IMG/VR virus record: IMGVR_UViG_3300033388_007730
Span: 155,189 to 219,188 of that record
Reading direction: 5' to 3' (one strand)
DNA: 64,000 nucleotides
Shown here: positions 1,763 through 51,799 of the stretch, one piece after another
How the letters are laid out: every line of letters begins with the position of its first letter
Position numbering within the stretch: position 1 is the first letter of the stretch
The notes under the pieces: model-generated
What the model was told of the DNA's origin: nothing
Database searches by the model: none
The model's input: the letters and a program-made list of their open reading frames with translations, nothing else
Translations under genes and position numbers: made by a program

Positions 1763-4400
1763 ATTGGATAGACCTACTATAATCAAAATTTTATCTAAGT
1801 TTAGATATTTATTCCAAGATTTATCTTATGGAGAAGATGCGGTTATGCAAAAGATAACTAACTATCTTCCTTCTAATCATATGGTATTTCCATGCGATGT
1901 AATAGATTTGAGAAAAATACTTATAGATGAAGAAATAAAATTTGATGATTATATACCATTGTTCTCTAAAAGATTTGCTGAGAGTTTTTTAAAAAGATAT
2001 GCTCTGTTTCTGGTGATTGATATAAGAAAGATTGATAAGGATAGTTTTAAATATGGTGGTTTGTGTATTTTAAGAGACAATGAGTTAGATATTAGTGACT
2101 CTTTAATAAGGATAGTAGTTAACAAACAGGCAGCTAATAATACTTTTAATGTGGTGCAAAATATGATGCAAGAATTGAACAAATATGTAGAATGTGTGGT
2201 AGAGAATAGTGTTCCTGGAATGAGTTCTCCTGCCCCTATATTATCATCTAGGAAGATAGTATTTAAAGCAGCTCAGAATGTTGAGTCTGAATTGTCTTTA
2301 GACCCGAAAGAAAAAAATATATTTGATTTTCTTAGAAGGGTTAAAAAAGATTATAATCTTCCTGTTCAGATGAGAGTAGCTGGTGGATGGGTTAGAGATA
2401 AATTGCTTGGCAAAGAAAGTGATGATATAGACATAGCTGTTAATATGCCAGGTTATGATTTTGCTAAGATAGTAGCAGATGCTGCTGTTAAATATAATGT
2501 AACGCATGACCCTAAAGCATACAAGGTTAGTTTAGAAAAATCAAAAGATCCTAGTGAAAAGACTCCTAATGATAGTCTTTTAGTAGGTGCAGTTTATCTT
2601 TTCGGGCAGAAAATAGAATTTGTTCCTATGAGAACAGAACATTATCCTGATCCTGATAGCAGGCAACCAGAAATAACTAATACTAATGATCCTAGAGAAG
2701 ATGTTAAAAGAAGAGATTTAACTATAAATTCTCTTTACTACAATGTTGATACTGGCAAAGTAGAAGATTATGTTGGTGGAAGAAAAGATTTGGGAGTAGA
2801 CGGAAATGGAACTATACTTCTAAGGACTCCTGATGATGCTTATAAAACATTTCATGAAGATCCTTTGAGATTATTGAGAGTTTTGAGATTCCACAGCCGT
2901 TATCCTAATAGCGTAATAGATCCTTCAGTCGTAGAAGCTATGAAAAATCCAGAAGTGCAAGCTTCTTATGCTAGAAAAGTTTCTACAGAGAGAGCTGGAC
3001 CAGAATTGATAAAAATGTTATCAGGAGCAAATCCTGTAGATTCTTTAAGATTGTTATTTGAGAGTGGTTTATACAAACAGGTTTTTGATGTTCCTTCTAT
3101 GAAGAATATAAATGAAGAAGGAATAATGATGGATCAAAGAAGTCCTTATCATGAAAAAAGTTTGTCAGATCATACTCTAGACGTTGTGAAGTACTTGAAT
3201 GAGAAAATGAGTAATGAGGGTGAAAGTGATTTAATGAGAGGATTGATGAATTTTGCTGCTATGTTCCATGATTTTGGGAAAATGAGTAACAAGGTTGCAA
3301 GACCACATAAAAATCCAAGATTCGAAGGTCATACTACTTATGTAGGTCATGAAAATGAATCTGAAACTATGGCAGAAGAAATAATGAATTCTATAGGACT
3401 TAAGGATTATCAAAAAAAGATAGTTAAAGCAGTCGTTAAATCCCATATGTTCCCTCATAAGTTCACTGGTTGGGCTGATTCTTGGGCTAAGAAGAAAAAA
3501 ATATGGAAAGGCAATGAGGGTCCAGGTAAATTTATGGAGAATCTAAAATTAAAAGGTTTAGATCAAAAGACTAGAGGATTAGAAGAAGATGATGAAGAAG
3601 TTATAGATAAGTCTGCTGACCTTTGGAAGTATGTTCATTATCATGCTGAGGCTGATTCTAAGGCTGGTAAAACTGGGAAGCATGATGAAGGGGAAACAGA
3701 GAGAGGTAGACAGTGGTTTGAAAATTATTACAATGATCCAGCTATAGAATTCACCAGAACGAGAGGTTCTGTCATAGATGGCAATACGATAAAAAATCTT
3801 GTTGAAGAAATTAGTGGATTAGAACAGCAAAAAAGGGATCCTACTCGAACTAAATTGAAAGTTGAAATAACACCTAATGTTATATCATTTGTGCAAAAAA
3901 GAATAGCTGATATGCAATATAGGCGTTTGATACCTCTTGATTTCGCGGCTATGGAAGAGGGTCCAGAGAAAGAGTCGTCTTTAATAAATTCTCAAAATAG
4001 AGCTGCTAATCAAGCTAGGCAAATAATCAAAAGTAATTTAGATAAATATTTAAAAATAACTCCAATTGAAGGAGAGACTACAATGAGTACTAGTTGGTAT
4101 GATAAAATAAAAACATCTAATACGATATCTAAACCTTTGCCAGTTCCTCAGGAAGAAGATCCTGAAGTTCATAAGGGGCCACAACCCATGGAGGCAAAAT
4201 ATCAAAAAGGCATGAGGGTTAGAGATAGAAGAAAGGGTTTGGTAGTCCCTCAGGATTTTGGAGTTGTTTATTCTATTAATAATAATACTAATATTATGAT
4301 AATACTATGGAATCCTGATAATAAAGAAAAGAAAAGAGAAGAGAAATTTGATATGGTTGAAGATACCGAAAAGTTGTCATTGATAGTGGCGGAGGTTTAA
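1734..4400 (+). CDS. cca: Class II CCA-adding tRNA nucleotidyltransferase with HD domain and N- and C-terminal extensions
   Basis: RVAGGWVRDKLLG..SDDIDI, RRDLTINS, EDPLRLLRVLRF, HT..V...FHDFGK; start may be TTG 1764. Confidence 0.88.
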   Translation: MVDALEGQDKLDRPTIIKILSKFRYLFQDLSYGEDAVMQKITNYLPSNHMVFPCDVIDLRKILIDEEIKFDDYIPLFSKRFAESFLKRYALFLVIDIRKIDKDSFKYGGLCILRDNELDISDSLIRIVVNKQAANNTFNVVQNMMQELNKYVECVVENSVPGMSSPAPILSSRKIVFKAAQNVESELSLDPKEKNIFDFLRRVKKDYNLPVQMRVAGGWVRDKLLGKESDDIDIAVNMPGYDFAKIVADAAVKYNVTHDPKAYKVSLEKSKDPSEKTPNDSLLVGAVYLFGQKIEFVPMRTEHYPDPDSRQPEITNTNDPREDVKRRDLTINSLYYNVDTGKVEDYVGGRKDLGVDGNGTILLRTPDDAYKTFHEDPLRLLRVLRFHSRYPNSVIDPSVVEAMKNPEVQASYARKVSTERAGPELIKMLSGANPVDSLRLLFESGLYKQVFDVPSMKNINEEGIMMDQRSPYHEKSLSDHTLDVVKYLNEKMSNEGESDLMRGLMNFAAMFHDFGKMSNKVARPHKNPRFEGHTTYVGHENESETMAEEIMNSIGLKDYQKKIVKAVVKSHMFPHKFTGWADSWAKKKKIWKGNEGPGKFMENLKLKGLDQKTRGLEEDDEEVIDKSADLWKYVHYHAEADSKAGKTGKHDEGETERGRQWFENYYNDPAIEFTRTRGSVIDGNTIKNLVEEISGLEQQKRDPTRTKLKVEITPNVISFVQKRIADMQYRRLIPLDFAAMEEGPEKESSLINSQNRAANQARQIIKSNLDKYLKITPIEGETTMSTSWYDKIKTSNTISKPLPVPQEEDPEVHKGPQPMEAKYQKGMRVRDRRKGLVVPQDFGVVYSINNNTNIMIILWNPDNKEKKREEKFDMVEDTEKLSLIVAEV

Positions 4401-28441: not shown

Positions 28442-28823
28442 GGGGACGACAGGATTGACTGGATAGGTAGAAAATTGAATTGCATGTCAGAGATGGTAGT
28501 TGGCTCTGTAAAAAATCTACTAAAAAGTTTAATTGCAAACAGTTACGCAATGGCTGCTTAAGCAGCAGGAGGGTGGCATAGCCTACCTTCCACCGATGTC
28601 TGTAAGGGAGTTTCCTGCTGGAACTTACAGGCTAATTTAGGCAGGATAGCCGAGAAACATTTTCTCATGGTGTGATTGGCGACAAGTCCCGATAAGGGGA
28701 TGAGATAGCGAAAGTTAGGGTTAGTCCGTTGTTCCTAACATAGTGAAAAAAAAACAACGGACTATACATGTAGATGTTTGATTTGAAATATCACAGGACG
28801 AGGCTTCAATGCCTCCGTCTCCA
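28442..28823 (+). ncRNA. ssrA: tmRNA; tag reading frame ANSYAMAA (28535-28561); CCA not encoded
   Basis: Acceptor stem GGGGACG/CGTCTCC+A with G3:U, T-arm GAGGC-TTCAAT-GCCTC, tag ending AA-stop. Confidence 0.92.
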
Positions 28824-28853
28824 TTATGATGAAGTTTTTTTAAGGATGTAATA

Positions 28854-40296: not shown

Positions 40297-41097
40297 ATGA
40301 GTAGTAGTTTAATTATACAAGTTAGTGAAATTAAAGACGTAAGAAATCATCCAAATGCTGATAGACTTGATATTATCTCTATTAAAGGTAAAGGATGGGA
40401 GACAATTGTTAAGAGAGATGAGTATAAGGTAGGAGATGTAGTTATTTATATTCCCACAGATGTTATTCTTCCTCTTGAATTGGTAGAGAAGCTTGGGATT
40501 GCGAATTACTTAGCTGGAAAGCAGAAGAATAGAGTTAAGTGCGCAAGACTCCGTGGTGAGATGTCTTATGGTTTGGTTATTCCTAATGAAAAGAATTGGG
40601 AAGTAGGACGAGATGTTGCGGCAGAATTGGGTATTGTAAAATACGAGCCTCCTGTCAGAGCTATGGCTGGTGACGCTGCTCCAGAGGATTCAACTTTTCA
40701 TCGTTATACTGATATTGAGAATATCAATAACTTTCCTGATATTTTCAAAGATGGTGAGATGGTTGTTGCTACAGAAAAAATTGATGGATGTTTTAGATAT
40801 GATCAAAAGGTTTCTCTTGTCAACGGAGAGCAAATTTCTATCTCAGAAGTTGAGATTGGAGATATGGTTCTTTCTTATGATGAAAAAGAGGGCGAATTTG
40901 TGGCATCTAAAGTTGAGGATGTTATTATTCAAAATGTCTCTAAACAATGGGTAGAATTATCGTTTGATAATGGAAAAGAAATTGTTTGTACTGCTGATCA
41001 TTTATTCTTAACTAAGAACAGAAGATGGGTAGAGGCTGGTGATCTGGAAGAAGAAGATGAATTAGTTACGATGGATGAAGAATTTGAAAATAAATAA
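40297..41097 (+). CDS. DRB0094-family RNA ligase N-fragment fused to IntN (40789-41094)
   Basis: HPNADRLD, LRG..SYGL, KYEPP, TEKIDG then CFRYD..CTADH. Confidence 0.88.
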   Translation: MSSSLIIQVSEIKDVRNHPNADRLDIISIKGKGWETIVKRDEYKVGDVVIYIPTDVILPLELVEKLGIANYLAGKQKNRVKCARLRGEMSYGLVIPNEKNWEVGRDVAAELGIVKYEPPVRAMAGDAAPEDSTFHRYTDIENINNFPDIFKDGEMVVATEKIDGCFRYDQKVSLVNGEQISISEVEIGDMVLSYDEKEGEFVASKVEDVIIQNVSKQWVELSFDNGKEIVCTADHLFLTKNRRWVEAGDLEEEDELVTMDEEFENK

Positions 41098-41156: not shown

Positions 41157-41283
41157 ATGGTAAAAAACAATTAAATCTATGTTTAGAATATGGGAAAAAG
41201 ATATAAAAAAAGATTTAATGTCACAGATCGAAAGGATTAGAAGTGAAATTGATAAGAAAAAGGCTGCTCGAACAAAGTTATAA
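41157..41283 (+). pseudogene. Remnant of deleted Vsr/DUF559-like endonuclease between split-intein halves
   Basis: RBS plus MVKNN stop, then FRIWEKDIKK...KL stop overlapping IntC start. Confidence 0.5.
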
Positions 41284-41971
41284 GTGCTGGGATCTAATTA
41301 TTGAAGGAGATCATCATAATTATTTAGTGGAGGGTGCGGTTGTTCATAACAGCAATAATAGGGTAGGTTTTGAGATTTCAGAGCCAGATCAGGATGGAAG
41401 TGTTTATGTTGAAATGAAAGCTGGTTCTAATAAGTTGAAGAGAAAACGTCCTCCAACAGAAAAAATGGCAGAGAATATTTATTGGTTTTCTCAATCTCTT
41501 GACTCTGTGAAGGGGTTACTCAATCATCTTGCTGAAGATGTTGGAGTTAAAAAGACTGTCGTTCTTTATGGTGAGGTTTATGGCAGAGTTCGTGGTGGTC
41601 ATAAGTCTCTTCATTATGGAAAGCCTGGAACTTTGAACTTTGCAGCATTTAGTTTGAAGATTGATGGTAAGTATGTTTCTTGGGATGTTTTTAAACGTCT
41701 GTGTGAGATTTTTGATGTACCTACTGTCCCTGTTGTTGGTATTTTTCCATTTAGCATGGAAAGAGCAAGAGAGTTAGCAACTGGTGATTCTCTTCTTGCA
41801 GCTAAGAATGGCACAAAGCATATGAGAGAAGGAATTGTTCTTTGTGCTTTTGAAGAGAGAGATGAAATGAAGACCAGGAGAGCTATTTTAAAGATGCTTA
41901 ATCCTGATTACCTTATCCTTAAAAATAAGAGTTATGCTAAGGGTGAGGCTACTGATTTTACAGATATGTAA
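41243..41971 (+). CDS. IntC (36 aa, 41243-41350) fused to RNA ligase C-fragment
   Basis: WDL.IEG.HHNYLVEGAVVHN then Ser; YGEVYG, REGIV, LK..NPDYL. Confidence 0.88.
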   Translation: MKLIRKRLLEQSYKCWDLIIEGDHHNYLVEGAVVHNSNNRVGFEISEPDQDGSVYVEMKAGSNKLKRKRPPTEKMAENIYWFSQSLDSVKGLLNHLAEDVGVKKTVVLYGEVYGRVRGGHKSLHYGKPGTLNFAAFSLKIDGKYVSWDVFKRLCEIFDVPTVPVVGIFPFSMERARELATGDSLLAAKNGTKHMREGIVLCAFEERDEMKTRRAILKMLNPDYLILKNKSYAKGEATDFTDM

Positions 41972-45149: not shown

Positions 45150-45497
45150 ATGATAGGTAAATTAATAAAATTTATTATTGCTTGGTTTAGAATACCTAGA
45201 GGACCATACTGTTACACGATTAAAGAGGTAATTAGAGACCCTTCAGGTAATGCTCCTTCAATGATTCGCTCTAAAGTTTGTCCTTACTGGGGGATTAGGA
45301 AAGATTTGCCAGCACAGGCTAATGGATATTGTAGGTATTTAAGAGTCACAGATGTAGATCAGAATAATGATCCAGAATCAGAGTTCGTCTGCACTGTAAA
45401 GGAGACAGGTGAGAAGAGTGTTCTTAAAGCTCCAGATATACCATTTGGTACAAGTCGTTTGTGGGATCAATGTAAAGAGTGTGGAATAAAGGAATAG
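45150..45497 (+). CDS. Cys-rich hypothetical protein
   Basis: IP.GPYCY, CPYW, GYC.YL, LWDQCKECG. Confidence 0.65.
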   Translation: MIGKLIKFIIAWFRIPRGPYCYTIKEVIRDPSGNAPSMIRSKVCPYWGIRKDLPAQANGYCRYLRVTDVDQNNDPESEFVCTVKETGEKSVLKAPDIPFGTSRLWDQCKECGIKE

Positions 45498-45975
45498 GTG
45501 AACTACCTCCTCCATAAAGGGGAGGCTTTTTAGATCTTTTACAACTGAATAATGACTAGATTGAGCCAGCTGTGCTTTTCTACAGTTACTTACATCAACT
45601 ATATTTTCTAAAGTAGAAAATATAGTTGATACAGAGGTTTCTGTATCCCTAAGCATTGTATTTCTACGTTCCGTAGAAATTAAAGTTTTTAATCCTTCAG
45701 TTTCGATACATTGAGCACTTTTCAAGTCTCTATCTTCTGTATAGCCACAAGAACAGTTATAAGTTCTCTGCCATACAGGTAGTTTATTTTTAGCTTTACA
45801 GACAGGGCAAAGTTGAGTAGAGGGAAAGAACTTATCAACCATTACAGATGTATGTGCTTTTTTCTTTAAAGCACTAATTATTCCACCTATAGCAGTATTT
45901 TGAATTTTCTTTCCGTGTCTCCCAGCTTTCCAGGCTTTGATGCTCTCATCCTGAAAGATGATATATTCAAGGTTG
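45498..45975 (-). mobile_element. tnpB: Truncated IS200/IS605-family element: TnpB C-terminal fragment with intact right end
   Basis: FPSTQLCPVC..R.Y.C.CG...DRD..SA; minus strand ends AAGCCTCCCCTTTATGGAGGAGGTAGTTCAC. Confidence 0.8.
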
Positions 45976-46140
45976 ATTTCGGATTGTGGAGGGATTTGGA
46001 TAAGAAGGACTCGTAACGTTACAGTAGATAAAGATGATGCTAAACTTATCCATGAGTTTAGTAGGAATAGAGTTAAGAGGTTGAGAATGATGAGCAAATC
46101 AAATCCAGTATCTAGAGAAGAGTTAATAGATTTAGATTAG
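45958..46140 (+). pseudogene. Probable 3' remnant of a gene ending SREELIDLD
   Basis: Begins inside the TnpB fragment; shared motif variant. Confidence 0.5.
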
Positions 46141-46769
46141 GTTCCTGTAGTTTCATTCATTGCTTTGACTATTAGGTAATATCTGAAACTCATTCTTCCT
46201 ACTTGGAGAGGTATACCACCAATCATAACTTCAACAAATTCATTTAGATCTGCATACGGAAGTCCAGTATCTTTTACTAATAGCTCATTATATCTGTTAG
46301 TAGCCATCGGCATACCTTTGAAATATATTTGTTTTGAAGGATCTACAGTTTTTGTTGATTCTACTATACTCATATAATTTAAATTAGCTATTTTTGCAGT
46401 AGCTAATCTATTGCCATTTAATACAAAATTAACATTATCATTGAGAGAATAAGCAGTATCTAGTGGATTAGGATTTTTTATAATATCTAAAGCATAGTAT
46501 GTTCCAATGATATCAGTAGAATTAGGTTCATTATTAACATCATTATCGGTGAAGCTAGAATCGTAAAATGGCGTTACAGAAAGAGGTATTCCACCTATAA
46601 CTAATTCAGATGAGTATTGCATGTCTGTAATAGGTCTTGCATAGTCGCCAGCATAAACTATTCTTAATGTGGCTGCTCCACCTGCTCTTTGTCCATTACT
46701 TTCGACAGCGAGTGTTGCTGTACCTACTGTGATGTCTGATATATCTGAATTACGCATTTTTGTAGTCAT
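46137..46769 (-). CDS. Hypothetical protein with repeated IGGIPL, possibly structural
   Basis: AAGGA RBS; upstream AAAGG-N17-CGAA motif. Confidence 0.7.
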   Translation of the reverse strand: MTTKMRNSDISDITVGTATLAVESNGQRAGGAATLRIVYAGDYARPITDMQYSSELVIGGIPLSVTPFYDSSFTDNDVNNEPNSTDIIGTYYALDIIKNPNPLDTAYSLNDNVNFVLNGNRLATAKIANLNYMSIVESTKTVDPSKQIYFKGMPMATNRYNELLVKDTGLPYADLNEFVEVMIGGIPLQVGRMSFRYYLIVKAMNETTGT

Positions 46770-46826
46770 TTTGTATTCCTTAAAAATATTATCTACTTAT
46801 ATTTCGATATTTTTATAGAAAATCCT

Positions 46827-46854
46827 TTGAAAGTGATTGTATATTTGGTATCAT
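46827..46854 (+). promoter_or_regulatory. Promoter TTGAAA-N16-TATCAT, back-to-back with a minus-strand AAAGG-N17-CGAAAT motif
   Basis: Sequence match. Confidence 0.6.
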
Positions 46855-46895
46855 ATTTATTATAAATAATAATTAAAATTTGTGGAGAAAAATTT

Positions 46896-47894
46896 ATGAA
46901 TACAGTTTATAGAGTATCGAGTAACGGGGGAGCACCAGCAAGGGCATCAGTACATAAAGTGTTAGATGGTAGTTCTGGAACACCAATACTCACTTCACCT
47001 GTTGAGAGAAAGAGTGTTGGAGTGGGAGCTTTAAAAGAAGCAGAAAAAATCTGTGATTATCACGATGATGGTGGTGATGAGGATGAGGATTGTTATGCTA
47101 ATCCAACTGGAATTGAAGATAGTTGTTTAAATGAAGATAATGATGTTGCTACTGTGAAGTTTGCGGAAGAGATAAAAGTAGATTTCATTCCGACCGTGGA
47201 TTTTAGAATAATGTGTAGATTTCTTGAAGCTAGTTCTGTTAATGATATTAAAAATCACCCATTCTCTGCCCCACCACTCATAACATTAATCCTCATGGAG
47301 GCATTACCTGGATATATGAAATCAAAAGATTATTCTTTTGCAGGAGAATTAAATTTTGATTGTCATGGTAATTCTATTCCACCAGAAAAAAATCCATGGA
47401 TAGTAGATGGGAAAGAGACAGCATTCACGATTCAAGGATTTTTGTATTTTGAATCTAATAGTGGCAAAAAAGAAGACAATGTTTGTTTCTTCTTATTCGC
47501 AGATTTAGAAAGAGGTGGTGCAGCCATAACATGTTATACTAGAGATGTTTTTAAATCTAAAACTGTTATAGGAGAGTTGCAGGAATATTCAAAGAGTCAT
47601 AATTGCTTGAGAGGTGCTAAGCTTAAAGATGTTAATATGTTCACTGCCTCTTTTACTGAGGTTGATAATTGCCCATCATATAACTGGGAAAATTATTATT
47701 ATCCAAAAAGTATAATTAATTTGTTTGACTTAGAAGTTTTTGAGTTTGTTAAAAACTCTGAGAGATATAATGAGTGTGGCATAACAAAGCGTGGTCTCAT
47801 TATGCATGGTAAACCAGGTTGTGTTTTGTCAGATACAAAAATAAAAATTAGAAAAAAGAAAAAAGAAGGAAAACATAATATTATTATAGAATAA
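46896..47894 (+). CDS. AAA+ ATPase N-fragment fused to 24-aa IntN (47820-47891)
   Basis: KRGLIMHGKPG then CVLSDTKIKI-stop. Confidence 0.85.
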   Translation: MNTVYRVSSNGGAPARASVHKVLDGSSGTPILTSPVERKSVGVGALKEAEKICDYHDDGGDEDEDCYANPTGIEDSCLNEDNDVATVKFAEEIKVDFIPTVDFRIMCRFLEASSVNDIKNHPFSAPPLITLILMEALPGYMKSKDYSFAGELNFDCHGNSIPPEKNPWIVDGKETAFTIQGFLYFESNSGKKEDNVCFFLFADLERGGAAITCYTRDVFKSKTVIGELQEYSKSHNCLRGAKLKDVNMFTASFTEVDNCPSYNWENYYYPKSIINLFDLEVFEFVKNSERYNECGITKRGLIMHGKPGCVLSDTKIKIRKKKKEGKHNIIIE

Positions 47895-47938
47895 TAGTAT
47901 AGTCCAATTACGGGTAATCCACAAAGGAGAATGCTATT

Positions 47939-48853
47939 ATGAAAAAAGAAATGTTTTTGAGAAATTGTCCTAAATGTGGCAAAGAATTAAGTTATACAAA
48001 TAAGAAAAATAGAAATACCGCTATTAAAAAGAAGAGGCTTTGTGGATCTTGTGCTTCGGTGGAGAGGAATCAGAAATATGGTAACAATAAAAAATTTATA
48101 GAAACATATGGGGTAAAAGGGAAGTGGATAGGTAAAAAAAATCCTTTCTATGGGAAACATCATTCTGAAGAATCTCTTGCAAAAATGCAAAAAAATAAAG
48201 ATTTTAGCACTTTTAAAAGTAAAAAGTTTAAAGATAAGATGTCCAAAATATCTTCTGGTAAAAATAATCCTATGTATGGGAAAAATTATTATGATATATG
48301 GGTAGAAAAATACGGGGAGAAAGAAGCCAATAAAAAAATGGCGATACTTAGGAAAGAGAAATCTATTCAGACTTCCGGCAAAAATAATCCTATGTATGGG
48401 AAACCAGCACCACAAGGGTCAGGAAATGGATGGAGTGGGTGGTATAAAGGATGGTTCTTCAGAAGCATTAAAGAATTGTCTTATATGGTAAATGTTATTG
48501 AAGTGAATGGATTTCAGTGGAGAACAGGAGAAACAAAAGATTTATGTATAAAGTATACTAGCTATGATGGGACGGAAAGAACTTATAGGGCAGATTTTTT
48601 AGTCGAGGAGAAAAAGTTAGTTGAAGTGAAACCTATAAAATTGTTTAATACCCCAAAAAATTTATTAAAAAAACAAGCAGCTGTTAAATTTTGTAAAAAA
48701 AATGGTTATGATTATGAGGTAGTTGATGTAAGATTGTTAGATTTTGAAAAAATGGAGAGTCTTTATAATCAAAAAAAGATTAGATTTACGAAAAAATATA
48801 AAAAAAAATATGAGCAATACATAAATAGGAGAAAAAATGATGGAGATAAGTGA
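47939..48853 (+). CDS. Homing endonuclease (NUMOD3-like repeats, TnsA-like PD-(D/E)xK) between split-intein halves
   Basis: GKNNPMYGK x2, FRS..E, YRADF..VEVKP. Confidence 0.8.
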   Translation: MKKEMFLRNCPKCGKELSYTNKKNRNTAIKKKRLCGSCASVERNQKYGNNKKFIETYGVKGKWIGKKNPFYGKHHSEESLAKMQKNKDFSTFKSKKFKDKMSKISSGKNNPMYGKNYYDIWVEKYGEKEANKKMAILRKEKSIQTSGKNNPMYGKPAPQGSGNGWSGWYKGWFFRSIKELSYMVNVIEVNGFQWRTGETKDLCIKYTSYDGTERTYRADFLVEEKKLVEVKPIKLFNTPKNLLKKQAAVKFCKKNGYDYEVVDVRLLDFEKMESLYNQKKIRFTKKYKKKYEQYINRRKNDGDK

Positions 48854-49853
48854 ACAAAAAGTTGTAGCTATTAGTGATTTTTTTAATCTTGTAGAGGACG
48901 AAGGTGGGATTTATGAAGTAGAAACTCCTCAAGGATGGGTAGAAATAGGAGATTTAGTCAAAAAGTCTAATAAAGAATGTTATGCTTTATTAACTGATAA
49001 TTATAATGAAATTAGAGGATCTAATGATCATTATGTGGAGACTAAAAGAGGGTGGGTAAAATTAGAAGATATAGATGTTAAGAATGATATTGTTTATACC
49101 GATGAAGGAGAAGAATTAGTAGTCTCTTTAGAAAGTATTGGAGTTCATGATACATTTGATTTAGAAGTTTTAAATGATGAGCATAAATACTATGCCAATG
49201 GAATTGTTAGCCATAATACAGGAAAAACAACAATTGGTAATATCATTTGTAATATGATACCAGATCATACCGTTATATGGATAACTCCTGAAATTTTAGC
49301 GGAGAATATGCATCGTGCTTTTAATTCTATTAAGTCATTATATAAATTGGCAGATTTTGTTTCTCCTTGTGTTATTATACTTGAGGATTTAGATTTATTT
49401 GGCAATGATCGAGACAAAGGTGGAGATATATTATCTCTTGGTGCTTTGATGAATGTTTTAGATGGTGTCAATTCTATTAAAAACGCTGTTACAATAGGAA
49501 CTACTAATAGATTAAGTTCCATTGAATCAGCTTTGAAGAATAGACCAGGAAGGTTTGACAGAGTTATAGAAATACCAGCACTTCCGAAAGAATTGAGAAA
49601 GAAGATGTTCAGAGATAGATTAAAAGGATGGACTGTTGAAAAGGGTGCATTGGATTATATCGTTGAGAACACTAATAAATGGACTGGAGCAGAAGCACAA
49701 GAATTTATCAATAGTTTGAATTTGAAACATATTGGCAGTAATAAGAAAAAGAAGAAAGTTACTATAGTGTGGGCAGAAGAGATTATCAAAACTATGAATA
49801 AATTTGGAGTGGGAGAAGCAAGTAGTTCATTCGGATTCGGTGCTGATAAATGA
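48837..49853 (+). CDS. IntC (127 aa, 48837-49217) fused to AAA+ ATPase C-fragment
   Basis: V.TPQGW, SNDH, FDLEV..H.YYANGIVSHN then TGKT; ILEDLD, TTNR, NRPGRFDR. Confidence 0.9.
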   Translation: MMEISEQKVVAISDFFNLVEDEGGIYEVETPQGWVEIGDLVKKSNKECYALLTDNYNEIRGSNDHYVETKRGWVKLEDIDVKNDIVYTDEGEELVVSLESIGVHDTFDLEVLNDEHKYYANGIVSHNTGKTTIGNIICNMIPDHTVIWITPEILAENMHRAFNSIKSLYKLADFVSPCVIILEDLDLFGNDRDKGGDILSLGALMNVLDGVNSIKNAVTIGTTNRLSSIESALKNRPGRFDRVIEIPALPKELRKKMFRDRLKGWTVEKGALDYIVENTNKWTGAEAQEFINSLNLKHIGSNKKKKKVTIVWAEEIIKTMNKFGVGEASSSFGFGADK

Positions 49854-49956
49854 AGTAGCGATAAGGACTTATAAAAAAATTTAAGAAAAAAAAAGGATTT
49901 TGTCTTTTTTCATAGTATGTGTATTCAATATTTTTTAATATTTTTTGAAAAAAGTA

Positions 49957-49984
49957 TTGACATTTTGGAATAATATGTTATAAT
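49957..49984 (+). promoter_or_regulatory. Promoter TTGACA-N16-TATAAT with extended TG
   Basis: Perfect hexamers upstream of Ro60 gene. Confidence 0.75.
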
Positions 49985-50059
49985 ACTTGAATAACATATT
50001 GTAAAGTTGTTATAAAGTATCTAAATTTTTAATTAGGTTGATTTTAGGGAGGATCAAAA

Positions 50060-51799
50060 ATGAGTAAGTATGCAAGTAATGTAACAAATCCACGTACACC
50101 ACAAAGCAAAAAAGCTAAGAGTAGTCAAGTTAAGAATAATGCTGGAGGATATGTATTCCAGGTTGATGATTGGACTCGTCTTAATCGTTTCCTTATTCTT
50201 GGTAATGAGGGAGGATCTTATTACGCTTCAGAGAATGAGATGTCTAATGATAACTATGATGTCATTAAGAGGTGTATGGCATTGGATAGTAAGAGAACAG
50301 TTGACACTATTGTTCAAATCAGTGATGAGGGTAGAGGTATCAAAAATGCCCCAGCTGTATTTGCTCTTGCTGTTTGTAGCGTATTCGGAGATCAGCAAAC
50401 AAGGTCTTATGCTAATAAGGTGATGCCAAAAGTAGCTAGGTATTCTACCGATCTATTCTCATGGGTAGATGCAGTTAATATTCTTAAAGAAGGACGTAAG
50501 GGTAAAGGAATGCTTCGAGCTATCGGAAGATGGTATACAGAGAAAGATGCTAATAATCTGGCATATCAAATCTGTAAATATCCATCACGTTCTATCGGTG
50601 GTCATAAGTGGGGTCACGCTGACCTGCTTCGTCTAGCTAGAATTTCTCCACCTGCTGCTAATGGTAAACCAGCTAAAGGTGGAAAGGCTTTAACTCTTCC
50701 ATCTGATGATCATGGTATTCTTTTGAAGTACGCTGTACATGGAGTTACATCTCCTCAAGAAATTGATGAGAGAGCTAAGTTAGCAGAGTCTACTGGTAAG
50801 GCACAAGAGAAAGCTGGTATTACTTCTGAGCAACTGGATGGGTTGAAGGATACCCCTTTGAAATATGTATATGCTCATGAGATGTGTAAGAAGGCTAATA
50901 CAGCAAATAAGGTAGTTGCGGTTATTAAGAAATATAAAGTTTCTAGAGAGTCTGTTGCTCCAAATCTAAGGAACGATAAAAAAGTTCAAAGGGCTTTATT
51001 GCCAAGTATGCCTATGACAGCTTTAATTAGGAACCTTGGTGGAATGACTGCTTCTGGTTTGTTGAAGCCATTGTCAGATGAGACTGCGATTGTTATTGAC
51101 AAGATTAGTAATAAAGAGAATCTTAAGAAAGGTCGTATTCATCCTATGAGCGTTTTGCTTGCTATGAAAGTTTATGAGCAAGGACATGGAATGAGAACTA
51201 GTTGGGAGCCAGTTCCACAAATCATAGATGCTCTTGAGAATAGTTTTTACGCAGCATTTAATTACGTAGAGCCAACAGGTAAGAAGTATTTACTTGGCAT
51301 TGATGTTAGTGGGTCTATGGATTGGGACAAGTTGTCTGAGAAAGTTCCAATGACTTCTGCTCAGTGTGCTGCTGCGGTAGCAATGACAATCGCTAGAACA
51401 GAGAAGAATTATCAAATGATGGCTTTTACTAGTATTTTCAAGAAATTGAATATCACAGCAAAAGACAGATTGGGAACAGTTCTTCGCAAGACTAGTGGTA
51501 TGGCTTTCGGCAGTACAGATTGTTCATTGCCAATGCAATATGCTAGCAAGCACGAACTTGATGTTGATGCTTTTGTTGTTCTTACAGATAGTGAGACTTG
51601 GTTTGGTGGAGTCCATCCATTTCAGGCTCTGAAGAGCTACAGGAGAAAGTTCAACAAAAATGCTAAGCTTATTGTTCTAGCATTCGAGGCAAATAGATTT
51701 AGTATTGCTGATCCAAGTGATGCTGGCATGATGGATATTGTAGGTATGGATAGTAATGTACCACGGATTCTATCAGAATTTGTCTCAGGGAAGCTTTAA
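50060..51799 (+). CDS. Ro60/TROVE-vWA RNA-binding protein
   Basis: NNAGGY.F, RFLILG.EGGSYY, W.H.DLLRL, MP.TALIRNL, IHP, DVSGSM, TDC.LPM, TDSETW. Confidence 0.95.
   Translation: MSKYASNVTNPRTPQSKKAKSSQVKNNAGGYVFQVDDWTRLNRFLILGNEGGSYYASENEMSNDNYDVIKRCMALDSKRTVDTIVQISDEGRGIKNAPAVFALAVCSVFGDQQTRSYANKVMPKVARYSTDLFSWVDAVNILKEGRKGKGMLRAIGRWYTEKDANNLAYQICKYPSRSIGGHKWGHADLLRLARISPPAANGKPAKGGKALTLPSDDHGILLKYAVHGVTSPQEIDERAKLAESTGKAQEKAGITSEQLDGLKDTPLKYVYAHEMCKKANTANKVVAVIKKYKVSRESVAPNLRNDKKVQRALLPSMPMTALIRNLGGMTASGLLKPLSDETAIVIDKISNKENLKKGRIHPMSVLLAMKVYEQGHGMRTSWEPVPQIIDALENSFYAAFNYVEPTGKKYLLGIDVSGSMDWDKLSEKVPMTSAQCAAAVAMTIARTEKNYQMMAFTSIFKKLNITAKDRLGTVLRKTSGMAFGSTDCSLPMQYASKHELDVDAFVVLTDSETWFGGVHPFQALKSYRRKFNKNAKLIVLAFEANRFSIADPSDAGMMDIVGMDSNVPRILSEFVSGKL

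What the first reader, a model, noticed from the sequence alone, without database searches (positions are those of the whole stretch)
46896..49853. Atypical natural split intein (24-aa IntN, 127-aa IntC) in the Walker A of an AAA+ ATPase, with an endonuclease gene between the halves
Trans-splicing would restore GKPG-TGKT. IntN is only CVLSDTKIKIRKKKKEGKHNIIIE (very basic) and IntC is acidic and ends SHN/T, a charge-complementary pair. Fractured-gene layouts and short-IntN inteins are established but uncommon; an AAA+ host and a TnsA-like PD-(D/E)xK intervening nuclease are unusual to my knowledge. A synthesisable IntN with Thr at +1 has biotechnology value.
Basis: partly seen in the sequence, partly recalled or inferred. 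Interest (0 to 1): 0.8.

Follow-up and report, generated by a model that had tools for sequence, protein, structure and literature searches.

The report
Short-IntN split intein in phage ATPase
A jumbo-phage AAA ATPase gene is cut in two inside its ATP-binding loop by a split intein with a 24-residue front half and a nuclease gene lodged between the halves; it is a real new relative of the known VidaL intein and the known "fractured gene" layout, not a new kind of element.

Summary
ORF 46896-47894 ends ...HGKPG|CVLSDTKIKIRKKKKEGKHNIIIE*. ORF 48837-49853 starts with a 127-aa segment ending ...VSHN|TGKT. ORF 47939-48853 between them encodes a zinc-ribbon, NUMOD3 and TnsA-like PD-(D/E)xK nuclease.

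In 10 of 12 intein-less full-length homologues, the N-extein end and C-extein start abut with no gap (GKPG|TGKT). The closest is 82% and 94% identical to the two exteins and sits in the same gene neighbourhood.

IntC is homologous to the VidaL intein crystal structure (E 2.4e-9). A contiguous relative models as a HINT fold that matches VidaL (TM 0.87). All splicing residues are invariant, and dN/dS of IntC is 0.08-0.27.

The arrangement recurs in about 45 protein clusters of this ATPase and in Clp-, PhoH- and RecA-like phage ATPases at the same P-loop site. Relatives carry the nuclease gene intact, decayed to a remnant, or not at all. On the extein tree the intein is scattered (at least 10, best estimate 28, gains or losses), which marks a mobile element.

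Verdict: a genuine atypical (S1-type) naturally split intein in a fractured gene. Splicing and nuclease activity were not tested.

The parts
46896..47819 (+). N-extein: 308 aa, an N-terminal domain of unknown function plus the first half of Walker A (…HGKPG).
   Evidence: ORF. It aligns to residue 308 with intein-less homologues, for example P0025 at 82% identity. No Pfam or PHROG hit.
47820..47891 (+). IntN: 24 aa, CVLSDTKIKIRKKKKEGKHNIIIE, Cys1 nucleophile, net charge +5. Stop TAA at 47892-47894, then TAG.
   Evidence: It is 24 aa in 22 of 25 partner clusters, consensus CV[LI]x[DG]TKIKIRKKKKEGKHxIIxE. In the model of the contiguous relative P0161 the equivalent residues form the first beta-hairpin of the HINT fold.
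47891..47940 (+). Predicted RNA hairpin that pairs the IntN stop region with the nuclease gene's start codon. An inner stem covers part of its Shine-Dalgarno (AAGGAG, 47924-47929).
   Evidence: -13.9 kcal/mol, z = -3.4, 1 of 200 shuffles folds as well. A similar pairing (7 of 8) can be read in L083. Its function is inferred. Dassa 2009 reports hairpins upstream of such endonuclease genes (PMC2677866).
47939..48853 (+). Free-standing putative homing endonuclease, 304 aa. Zinc ribbon CxxC…CxxC (47966-48052), NUMOD3-type repeats (about 48131-48400), TnsA-like PD-(D/E)xK nuclease domain (about 48431-48724; E179, D219, E229, K231).
   Evidence: Pfam NUMOD3 at 56.7 bits and Tn7_TnsA-like_N at 27.2 bits against a cutoff of 26.5. 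Invariant Cys, E, D, ExK columns in 32 homologues. Model pLDDT 85.8. Foldseek top hits are TnsA 1t0f/1f1z (prob 1.00/0.98), then I-Bth0305I 3r3p (prob 0.96).
48827..48831 (+). Shine-Dalgarno (AGGAG) of the IntC gene, lying inside the 3' end of the nuclease ORF. The nuclease stop (48851-48853) overlaps the IntC start.
   Evidence: Read. The relative L082 has lost most of the nuclease gene yet keeps exactly this 3' portion.
48837..49217 (+). IntC: 127 aa, net charge -19. Carries block B (S62-x-D64-H65), block F (D108, H116) and terminal H126-N127.
   Evidence: PDB sequence search: VidaL 6vgv E 2.4e-9, Spl DnaX mini-intein 3.1e-7, gp41-1 2.8e-5, with block B and G residues aligned. The residues are invariant in 28 homologues. 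dN/dS is 0.08-0.27.
49218..49853 (+). C-extein: 211 aa. Thr+1 and the second half of Walker A (TGKT), Walker B (ILEDLD), sensor-1 (TTN) and the Arg-finger region (NRPGRFDR) of a classic-clade AAA domain.
   Evidence: Pfam AAA PF00004, 2.5e-16. Invariant motif columns. 94% identical to intein-less P0025. P0025 matches VAT, CDC48 and p97 D2 domains in the PDB.

Best explanation
This is a fractured AAA ATPase gene of an uncultured marine jumbo phage (contig 219 kb). It carries a class-1, atypically split intein of the VidaL type.

Inferred mechanism:
1. Two polypeptides are made: N-extein(308)-IntN(24) and IntC(127)-C-extein(211).
2. The short, basic IntN (+5) docks onto the acidic, incomplete IntC (-19) and supplies the first beta-hairpin of the HINT fold.
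3. Cys1 forms a thioester at Gly-1.
4. Thr+1 takes over the acyl group.
5. Asn127 cyclises and releases the intein.
6. An O-to-N shift leaves a 519-aa ATPase with an intact Walker A (GKPGTGKT). The ATPase therefore cannot bind ATP until splicing has occurred.

The gene between the halves encodes a free-standing homing endonuclease with a zinc ribbon, NUMOD3 DNA-binding repeats and a TnsA-like PD-(D/E)xK nuclease domain. It presumably cuts intein-less alleles near the Walker A codons during co-infection. Recombinational repair would then copy the nuclease gene together with both intein halves.

The split position is where this gene sits inside the intein coding sequence. Once the gene is split, splicing must be kept even after the nuclease gene decays.

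Shown here: anatomy, homology, exact insertion site, conservation, patchy distribution and stages of nuclease-gene decay. Inferred: splicing chemistry, nuclease activity and its target.
For: **Exact junction.** The exteins abut with no gap in 10 of 12 intein-less homologues. The syntenic intein-less allele L084/P0025 is 82% and 94% identical to the two exteins. Its DNA is 53/60 identical across the site.

**Intein identity.** IntC matches VidaL (E 2.4e-9) and other inteins, with aligned block B, F and G residues. C1, H65, D108, H116, H126, N127 and the +1 S/T/C position are conserved. The contiguous relative P0161 models at pLDDT 92.8 and matches VidaL 6vgv (E 3.8e-10, TM 0.87).

**Selection.** IntC dN/dS is 0.08-0.27 and IntN about 0.2.

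**Split form kept without the nuclease gene.** L086 and L009 have none. L082 keeps only a 57-aa remnant (E 1e-17).

**Mobility.**
- On a C-extein tree of 118 homologues the intein state needs 28 changes, with at least 10 forced by strongly supported branches.
- The window's allele is sister to an intein-less one, with 99% SH-aLRT support.
- IntC is 56-61% identical to that of a second AAA family whose exteins are only 28-33% identical.
- IntC dS is about 1, against about 2-3 for the exteins.

**Nuclease.** Pfam, invariant catalytic residues and fold hits to TnsA and I-Bth0305I.

**No RNA explanation.** There is no Rfam match. The nuclease ORF is in another frame with its own Shine-Dalgarno.
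Against:
- The window's own IntN plus IntC pair could not be modelled together. The fold evidence comes from a contiguous relative whose IntC is 56% identical.
- Thr+1 is a weaker nucleophile than Cys or Ser, so splicing may be slow or conditional.
- The Pfam hit for the nuclease domain is only just above threshold, and the Foldseek E-values are weak (about 1e-2) because the query has several domains.
- dS values are near saturation.
- The quick tree has many weakly supported forks, so 28 is a best estimate and 10 the conservative number.
Confidence: 0.85

Rival explanations
1. Decaying locus. A nuclease gene invaded an intein-bearing AAA gene and destroyed it. The two ORFs are non-functional remnants and no splicing occurs.
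For: Nuclease genes do decay in relatives. In L085 the IntN is cut to 15 aa by an unrelated ORF. No activity data exist.
Against: Both ORFs are intact with Shine-Dalgarno sites. Every splicing residue and every AAA motif is invariant across about 45 clusters. IntN is exactly 24 aa in 22 of 25 clusters. dN/dS is well below 1 for the intein parts and the exteins. The split form persists in relatives that have lost the nuclease gene.
Confidence: 0.05
2. Non-covalent reconstitution. IntN and IntC only hold the two ATPase halves together, or cleave without ligating, and the Walker A is never rejoined.
For: Strong charge complementarity (+5/-19) would support tight association. Thr+1 is a poor nucleophile.
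Against: A P-loop interrupted by about 150 residues is unlikely to bind ATP. Cys1, the block B His, the block F Asp and His, the terminal His-Asn and an S/T/C at +1 are all conserved, which is needed only for chemistry. The homologue VidaL splices with a half-time of about 1 min (PMC13014065).
Confidence: 0.05
3. Joining at the RNA or translation level. The 945-nt insert would be removed as an intron, or bypassed by the ribosome.
For: Phage nuclease genes often sit in group I introns (PMC2677866). The two extein ORFs are in the same frame.
Against: No Rfam family matches 46500-50200 even at E<=1. The sequences flanking the insert are protein-level intein motifs under purifying selection. The insert is a conserved ORF with its own start signals, and stops in the extein frame lie between the halves.
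Confidence: 0.01
4. The intervening nuclease is not, or is no longer, a homing enzyme for this site. It could be a domesticated or defence-related nuclease that happens to sit here, with the intein spreading by ordinary recombination.
For: The target site is unknown. The family is very large (1268 relatives), and I did not survey how many members lie outside inteins.
Against: Homologues of this nuclease lie between the halves of the same intein type in this AAA family, in a second AAA family and in another P-loop gene (L083, the P0022 locus, P0177, L026). By matching contig lengths this holds in about 17 further split loci. It is lost by deletion in others, which is the classic homing cycle.
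Confidence: 0.1

Closest known systems
VidaL intein (naturally atypically split; PDB 6vgv/6vgw)
   Same: It is homologous by sequence: IntC 6-126 aligns to chain residues 22-141 at E 2.4e-9. It is also the best structural match for the contiguous relative's model, TM 0.87. It has the same class-1 Cys1 chemistry. It has the same split position just after the first beta-hairpin (S1), as described for VidaL in PMC13014065.
   Different: IntN is 24 aa here against 16 aa. The extra residues are a basic RKKKKEGK loop. Residue +1 is Thr here. The host is a classic AAA ATPase. I could not retrieve VidaL's natural host gene from the held literature.
AceL-TerL, GOS-TerL and Cat-TerL atypical split inteins
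   Same: These are natural, phage-derived split inteins from metagenomes with a short IntN (25-37 aa) and a long IntC (104-115 aa). They are used for semisynthesis (PMC11766414).
   Different: They are split after the first helix (the S2 position, PMC13014065), and their host is the large terminase. CatC is only a weak sequence hit (E 0.068).
Fractured genes (Dassa et al. 2009, PMC2677866)
   Same: The layout is identical: N-extein plus IntN ORF, a free-standing endonuclease ORF on the same strand, then an IntC plus C-extein ORF. They occur mainly in phage metagenomes. There is a hairpin upstream of the endonuclease gene. Variants that lack one component also exist.
   Different: Their hosts were DNA-metabolism enzymes and the terminase. 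Their endonucleases were GIY-YIG or Vsr-like (EDxHD). Here the host is an AAA ATPase of unknown role and the nuclease is TnsA-like.
I-Bth0305I / EDxHD homing endonucleases (PMC3239194; PDB 3r3p)
   Same: The domain order is the same: N-terminal NUMOD DNA-binding repeats and a C-terminal restriction-endonuclease-fold nuclease. It is a structural hit at prob 0.96, TM 0.55 on the target. It is also found in fractured genes.
   Different: There is no sequence hit to 3r3p or to Pfam Vsr. The motif here is the canonical D…ExK (D219, E229, K231), not EDxHD with a catalytic His. The repeats are NUMOD3 rather than NUMOD2. There is an extra N-terminal zinc ribbon.
TnsA N-terminal nuclease domain of Tn7
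   Same: It gives the best Pfam match (PF08722) and the best fold matches (1t0f, 1f1z) for residues about 165-262.
   Different: There is no TnsA C-terminal domain, no TnsB/C partners and no transposon ends. It is used here as a site-specific free-standing nuclease fused to NUMOD3 repeats.
P-loop inteins of AAA+ and other ATPases (MCM, RFC, LonB, DnaB; Novikova et al., PMC4760082)
   Same: The insertion is inside the Walker A or P-loop, a documented intein hot spot.
   Different: Those are mostly contiguous inteins, often with an internal endonuclease domain, in cellular replication proteins.

Membership tests
Class-1 intein (HINT domain) | Cys or Ser at intein position 1, directly after the N-extein. 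| tested here: met
   Cys309 follows GKPG. Cys is present in all 25 partner clusters.
Class-1 intein (HINT domain) | Block B Thr/Ser-x-x-His. | tested here: met
   S62-N-D64-H65 aligns to the block B His of the DnaX and gp41-1 inteins. S62, D64 and H65 are invariant in 28 sequences.
Class-1 intein (HINT domain) | Block F Asp/His, a terminal His-Asn, and Cys/Ser/Thr at +1. | tested here: met
   D108, H116, H126, N127 and T128 are invariant in A1. Across the wider family, residue +1 is T, S or C.
Class-1 intein (HINT domain) | In-frame insertion whose removal restores a conserved host motif. | tested here: met
   There is no gap between the extein ends in 10 of 12 intein-less homologues, giving GKPG|TGKT.
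Class-1 intein (HINT domain) | HINT horseshoe fold formed by the N and C parts together. | tested here: inconclusive
   Met for the contiguous relative P0161:297-458 (pLDDT 92.8; VidaL TM 0.87). The window's own two pieces could not be folded together.
Class-1 intein (HINT domain) | Protein (trans-)splicing activity. | not testable with these tools
   Needs expression and mass spectrometry.
Atypically split (S1, VidaL-type) natural split intein | IntN and IntC on separate ORFs, with an IntN of about 15-37 aa. | tested here: met
   The 24-aa IntN ends at a stop, and IntC has its own Shine-Dalgarno and ATG 945 nt downstream.
Atypically split (S1, VidaL-type) natural split intein | Homology to VidaL and the same split position. 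| tested here: met
   E 2.4e-9. IntC residue 6 aligns to residue 22 of the fused VidaL chain, which places IntC residue 1 at about residue 17. That is just after VidaL's 16-aa IntN (IntN length from PMC13014065).
Fractured gene (Dassa 2009) | A free-standing endonuclease ORF between the split-intein halves, on the same strand. | tested here: met
   ORF 47939-48853 with nuclease domains.
EDxHD (Vsr-like) homing endonucleases | Vsr-like catalytic domain with the E-D-x-H-D residues. | tested here: not met
   There is no Pfam Vsr hit and no PDB sequence hit to 3r3p. The invariant residues are D219 and E229-x-K231. Only the fold is similar.
TnsA-like PD-(D/E)xK nuclease domain (PF08722) | Profile match above the gathering score, with conserved acidic and Lys catalytic residues. 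| tested here: met
   27.2 bits against a cutoff of 26.5. The precomputed PF08722 hit is on most of the 120 listed homologues. E179, D219, E229 and K231 are invariant. TnsA is the top Foldseek hit.
Homing endonuclease (functional class) | Cleaves the element-free allele and promotes copying of the element. | not testable with these tools
   Only indirect support: the patchy distribution of the intein and the decay series of the nuclease gene.
Classic-clade AAA ATPase (PF00004) | Walker A, Walker B, sensor-1 and second region of homology. | tested here: met
   PF00004 at 2.5e-16. The motifs are invariant. Walker A is complete only after joining residue 308 to residue 128. P0025 matches VAT, CDC48 and p97.

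The most novel reading that the evidence does not exclude
The 304-aa protein (zinc ribbon, NUMOD3 repeats, TnsA-like D…ExK nuclease) may represent an abundant, so far undescribed lineage of homing endonucleases. It would be distinct from both I-Ssp6803I and the EDxHD family. It would recognise Walker A coding DNA and so move S1-split inteins between non-orthologous P-loop ATPase genes of phages. Its insertion inside the intein gene would be what created the atypical short-IntN split.

One family would then offer a natural series of stages: contiguous mini-intein (P0161, P0187), split with nuclease gene (this window), nuclease-IntC fusion ORF (P0177), nuclease remnant (L082, L017, P0175), and split without nuclease gene (L086, L009).
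Probability: 0.5. Interest if true: 0.6.

Novelty: new member of a known kind. Interest (0 to 1): 0.45.

Why it matters
Short-IntN split inteins are sought-after tools for protein semisynthesis. Only a handful of natural ones have been characterised (AceL-TerL, GOS-TerL, VidaL, PolB16).

This locus and its roughly 45 close clusters, plus hundreds of more distant ones, offer a deep natural library of VidaL-type pairs. They show varied +1 residues (Thr, Ser, Cys) and a conserved basic capture loop.

For evolution, the family shows in one lineage how a free-standing nuclease gene can split an intein at a non-canonical position. It also shows that the split persists after the nuclease gene decays.

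For phage biology, a conserved jumbo-phage AAA ATPase, always next to a Ro60/TROVE gene, can become active only after protein splicing.

Tried and rejected
- **Phage GenBank collection.** No DNA match to the region and no protein match to the N-extein. The C-piece gave only distant AAA hits, plus one intein hit in a Serratia phage terminase.
- **Rfam.** Nothing over 46500-50200 at E<=1, so an intron reading was dropped.
- **The search for related loci with the single protein.** It returned only the window's own contig. The alignment query was needed.
- **PDB search with the 24-aa IntN alone.** No hit, as the query is too short. A first attempt used coordinates that were off by two bases.
- **PDB sequence search with the nuclease.** Nothing meaningful. 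The fold search was needed.
- **Sequencing runs.** None was listed for the whole region. There is therefore no read-level or RNA evidence.
- **Alignment A3.** MAFFT tore the short IntN rows apart, so A3 was discarded and A4 was used without them.
- **Local alignment of the whole C piece to intein-less homologues.** It over-extended into IntC through a chance resemblance: DLFDLEV in the N-extein against DTFDLEV in block F. I redid it with the extein only.
- **Burton et al. 2020 (VidaL paper).** Not held, so VidaL's native host gene could not be checked.
- **Literature search for TnsA-like homing endonucleases with NUMOD or inteins.** Nothing relevant was found.
- **The 183-aa ORF between the halves in L085.** It is unrelated to this nuclease.
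Full report
**1. Observation**

- ORF 46896-47894 (+) ends …GLIMHGKPG-CVLSDTKIKIRKKKKEGKHNIIIE, then TAA and TAG.
- ORF 48837-49853 (+) begins MMEISEQK… and reads …YYANGIVSHN-TGKTTIGN… at residues 118-135.
- ORF 47939-48853 (+) lies between them in another frame. It has its own AAGGAG nine bases before its ATG. Its stop overlaps the start of the downstream ORF, whose AGGAG lies inside it.

IntN is 24 aa with net charge +5. IntC is 127 aa with net charge -19. The window comes from IMG/VR contig UViG_3300033388_007730, which is 219,188 bp. It has about 32% G+C, and nearly all its genes are on one strand. It is an uncultured jumbo phage, and its relatives come from marine metagenomes.

**2. Is it an insertion in a real gene?**

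A search with the downstream protein found about 45 clusters of the same 335-350-aa form (…HN|[TS]GK[TS]). It also found about 70 full-length proteins of about 500-570 aa with an uninterrupted GxxG[T]GK[ST].

I aligned the two exteins separately to 12 of the full-length proteins. In 10 of them, residue 308 of the upstream piece and residue 128 of the downstream piece fall on adjacent residues. In the other two the +1 residue simply differs.

The closest full-length protein, P0025, is 82% identical to the N-extein and 94% identical to the C-extein. Its gene (L084) lies in the same neighbourhood: a roughly 210-aa gene on the opposite strand upstream and a TROVE/Ro60-vWA gene downstream. The DNA on either side of the insertion point is 53/60 identical to the window and encodes the same 20 residues.

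The host protein has a classic-clade AAA domain, with VAT, CDC48 and p97 D2 as the best PDB matches. Its roughly 300-aa N-terminal domain matches no known family.

**3. Is the insertion an intein?**

IntC alone matches solved inteins by sequence:
- VidaL (6vgv/6vgw), E 2.4e-9, over residues 6-126
- Spl DnaX mini-intein, E 3.1e-7
- gp41-1, E 2.8e-5

In those alignments S62-N-D-H65 sits on block B, D108 and H116 on block F, and H126-N127 on the C-terminal His-Asn. These residues and Thr+1 are invariant in 28 homologues. Cys1 is present in all 25 upstream partner clusters.

The tools would not take the two pieces joined, so I used a natural contiguous relative found by the exhaustive search. This is P0161, a 680-aa AAA protein: GSPG|CVIKGTKIKIRKKNNKGKHTII-linker-MHIGEEKE…IVSHN|CGKT. 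Its intein modelled at pLDDT 92.8 and pTM 0.85, with only the linker weak. Its best structural match is VidaL (E 3.8e-10, TM 0.78/0.87, rmsd 2.2 Å), followed by dozens of other inteins.

The IntN-equivalent residues form the first beta-hairpin. This agrees with the S1 split position described for VidaL (PMC13014065). The sequence alignment places IntC residue 1 just after VidaL's 16-aa IntN. Relative to VidaL, IntN is 8 residues longer, and I attribute the difference to the basic RKKKKEGK loop.

**4. Is it functional?**

IntN is exactly 24 aa in 22 of 25 clusters, with consensus CV[LI]x[DG]TKIKIRKKKKEGKHxIIxE. Against four relatives with DNA available, dN/dS was as follows:

| Segment | dN/dS |
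|---|---|
| IntC | 0.08-0.27 |
| IntN | about 0.2 |
| Exteins | 0.12-0.18 |

dS is near saturation, so these are rough figures.

Relatives keep the split arrangement after losing the middle gene. L086 and L009 have gaps of only about 60-120 nt. L082 has a 202-nt gap that still encodes a 57-aa remnant of the nuclease C-terminus (60% identity, E 1e-17). That is the part carrying the ribosome-binding site for the IntC gene. A split that persists without its nuclease gene, under purifying selection, argues that trans-splicing is needed to make the ATPase.

**5. The middle gene**

Pfam gives NUMOD3 (56.7 bits) and Tn7_TnsA-like_N (27.2 bits, cutoff 26.5). PHROGs gives an "endonuclease" family. The family is large, with 1268 relatives at E<=1e-3.

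An alignment of 32 members shows:
- an invariant CxxC…CxxC zinc ribbon
- three NUMOD3-like G-x-x-N-P-M-Y-G repeats
- a GSGNGWSGWYKGWFFRS motif
- an invariant E179 … D219 … E229-x-K231, the canonical PD-(D/E)xK signature

The model has pLDDT 85.8. Its best fold matches are TnsA (1t0f, 1f1z; prob 1.00 and 0.98) and then the catalytic domain of I-Bth0305I (3r3p; prob 0.96). The E-values are weak because the query has several domains.

It has the same domain order as the EDxHD enzymes of Dassa's fractured genes (PMC2677866, PMC3239194). It lacks their motif and has no sequence match to them.

A predicted RNA hairpin (47891-47940, z = -3.4) pairs the IntN stop region with the nuclease start codon and part of its Shine-Dalgarno. 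This is reminiscent of the hairpins reported upstream of such genes (PMC2677866). Its role is inferred.

**6. Mobility**

On a maximum-likelihood tree of 118 C-exteins (42 split, 76 intein-less), the intein state needs 28 changes. At least 10 are forced by branches with SH-aLRT >=95, and label shuffles average 34.5. Six well-supported sister pairs each join a split allele to an intein-less one, including the window with P0025 (99).

The window's IntC is 56-61% identical to that of a second AAA family (P0083-P0105), whose exteins are only 28-33% identical. Against L082 and L085, IntC is more conserved than the exteins (79-85% against 54-72%). Its dS is also lower, about 1 against 2-3. The intein therefore has a more recent common history than its host genes.

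**7. The wider family**

The exhaustive search with IntC gave 599 representative clusters at E<=1e-3. Of the best 147, 82 carry it at the very N-terminus, which is the split form. About 25 more carry it after a short leader. Residue +1 is mostly [CTS]GK[ST], a P-loop.

In viral contigs the same IntN and IntC type sits at the same Walker A position in several other hosts:
- another AAA gene (L009)
- Clp-like genes (L017, L021, L041)
- PhoH-like genes (L057, L067)
- RecA/UvsX-like genes (L061, L072-L080)
- another gene (L026)

Most of these have a middle ORF. Two unrelated nuclease families are involved:
- the TnsA-like family, found in AAA hosts, L026 and P0177
- a family of about 400 aa, found in Clp, PhoH and RecA-like hosts, with one weak Vsr hit

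Decay stages are visible in both families, in L082, L017 and P0175. Contiguous versions also exist: P0161, P0187, P0184, P0189 and the DnaB-like P0205.

**8. Comparison with what is known**

Fractured genes were described in 2009 (PMC2677866). Natural short-IntN split inteins are known: AceL-TerL 25 aa, GOS-TerL 37, VidaL 16 and PolB16 15 (PMC11766414, PMC13014065, PMC10189870). P-loops, including those of AAA+ proteins, are a documented intein hot spot (PMC4760082).

This locus is a new member. It is a VidaL homologue with a longer, basic IntN and Thr at +1, in a new host gene, with a nuclease lineage that the literature I could search does not describe in this role. It is not a new kind of system.

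**9. Limits**

There are no activity data and no reads. The window's own IntN plus IntC pair was not modelled. The nuclease target is unknown. The tree was built with the quick method.

Noticed in passing
window 40297-41097 (+) and 41243-41971 (+): A second, canonically split intein in the same window. An RNA ligase (DRB0094/PHA02142 type) is cut at motif I. The first ORF ends …ATEKIDG|CFRYDQ… with an IntN of about 100 aa (Pfam Hint, TIGR01445 intein_Nterm). The second starts with an IntC of about 36 aa (…LVEGAVVHN|SNNRV…) followed by the rest of the ligase. The gap is about 145 nt with no nuclease gene. In relative L084 the ligase appears uninterrupted.
   Followed up: partly
window 28442-28826 (+): A phage-encoded tmRNA gene (Rfam RF00023, 108 bits, full length).
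   Followed up: no
window 50060-51799 (+): A Ro60/TROVE plus vWA protein gene lies directly downstream of the AAA gene. The AAA-then-Ro60 order is kept in L082, L084 and the P0022 locus, which suggests a functional link. No Y-RNA-like Rfam hit in the window.
   Followed up: partly
window 45381-46097 (-): An ORF with a Cas12f1-like TNB (TnpB C-terminal) domain only (Pfam 35.6 bits). It is probably a fragment of a TnpB-type element, two genes upstream of the fractured gene.
   Followed up: partly
L082 5637-6287: In the relative that has lost the nuclease gene, a T4 Rnl1-type RNA ligase fragment carries weak intein-splicing hits. This may be a further split intein in that phage.
   Followed up: no
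L085 3425-3976 and N-extein tail at about 3440-3486: In this relative an unrelated 183-aa ORF overlaps and truncates IntN to 15 aa (CVLADTKIKVRKKNV). That is about the length of VidaL's IntN. It is either a still-functional minimal IntN or a dead allele.
   Followed up: partly
P0177 (653 aa) and P0175 (468 aa): Gene calls in which the TnsA-like nuclease (whole, or only its zinc-ribbon and NUMOD start) is fused in frame to IntC and an AAA extein. These are possible intermediates between a free-standing nuclease gene and an intein-embedded one.
   Followed up: partly
window 47892-47905 and the equivalent sites in L082, L083 and L086: A conserved TAATAGTATAGT-like motif follows the IntN stop. It is kept even in L086, which has no nuclease gene. 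It could be a -10-like promoter element or part of the hairpin.
   Followed up: no
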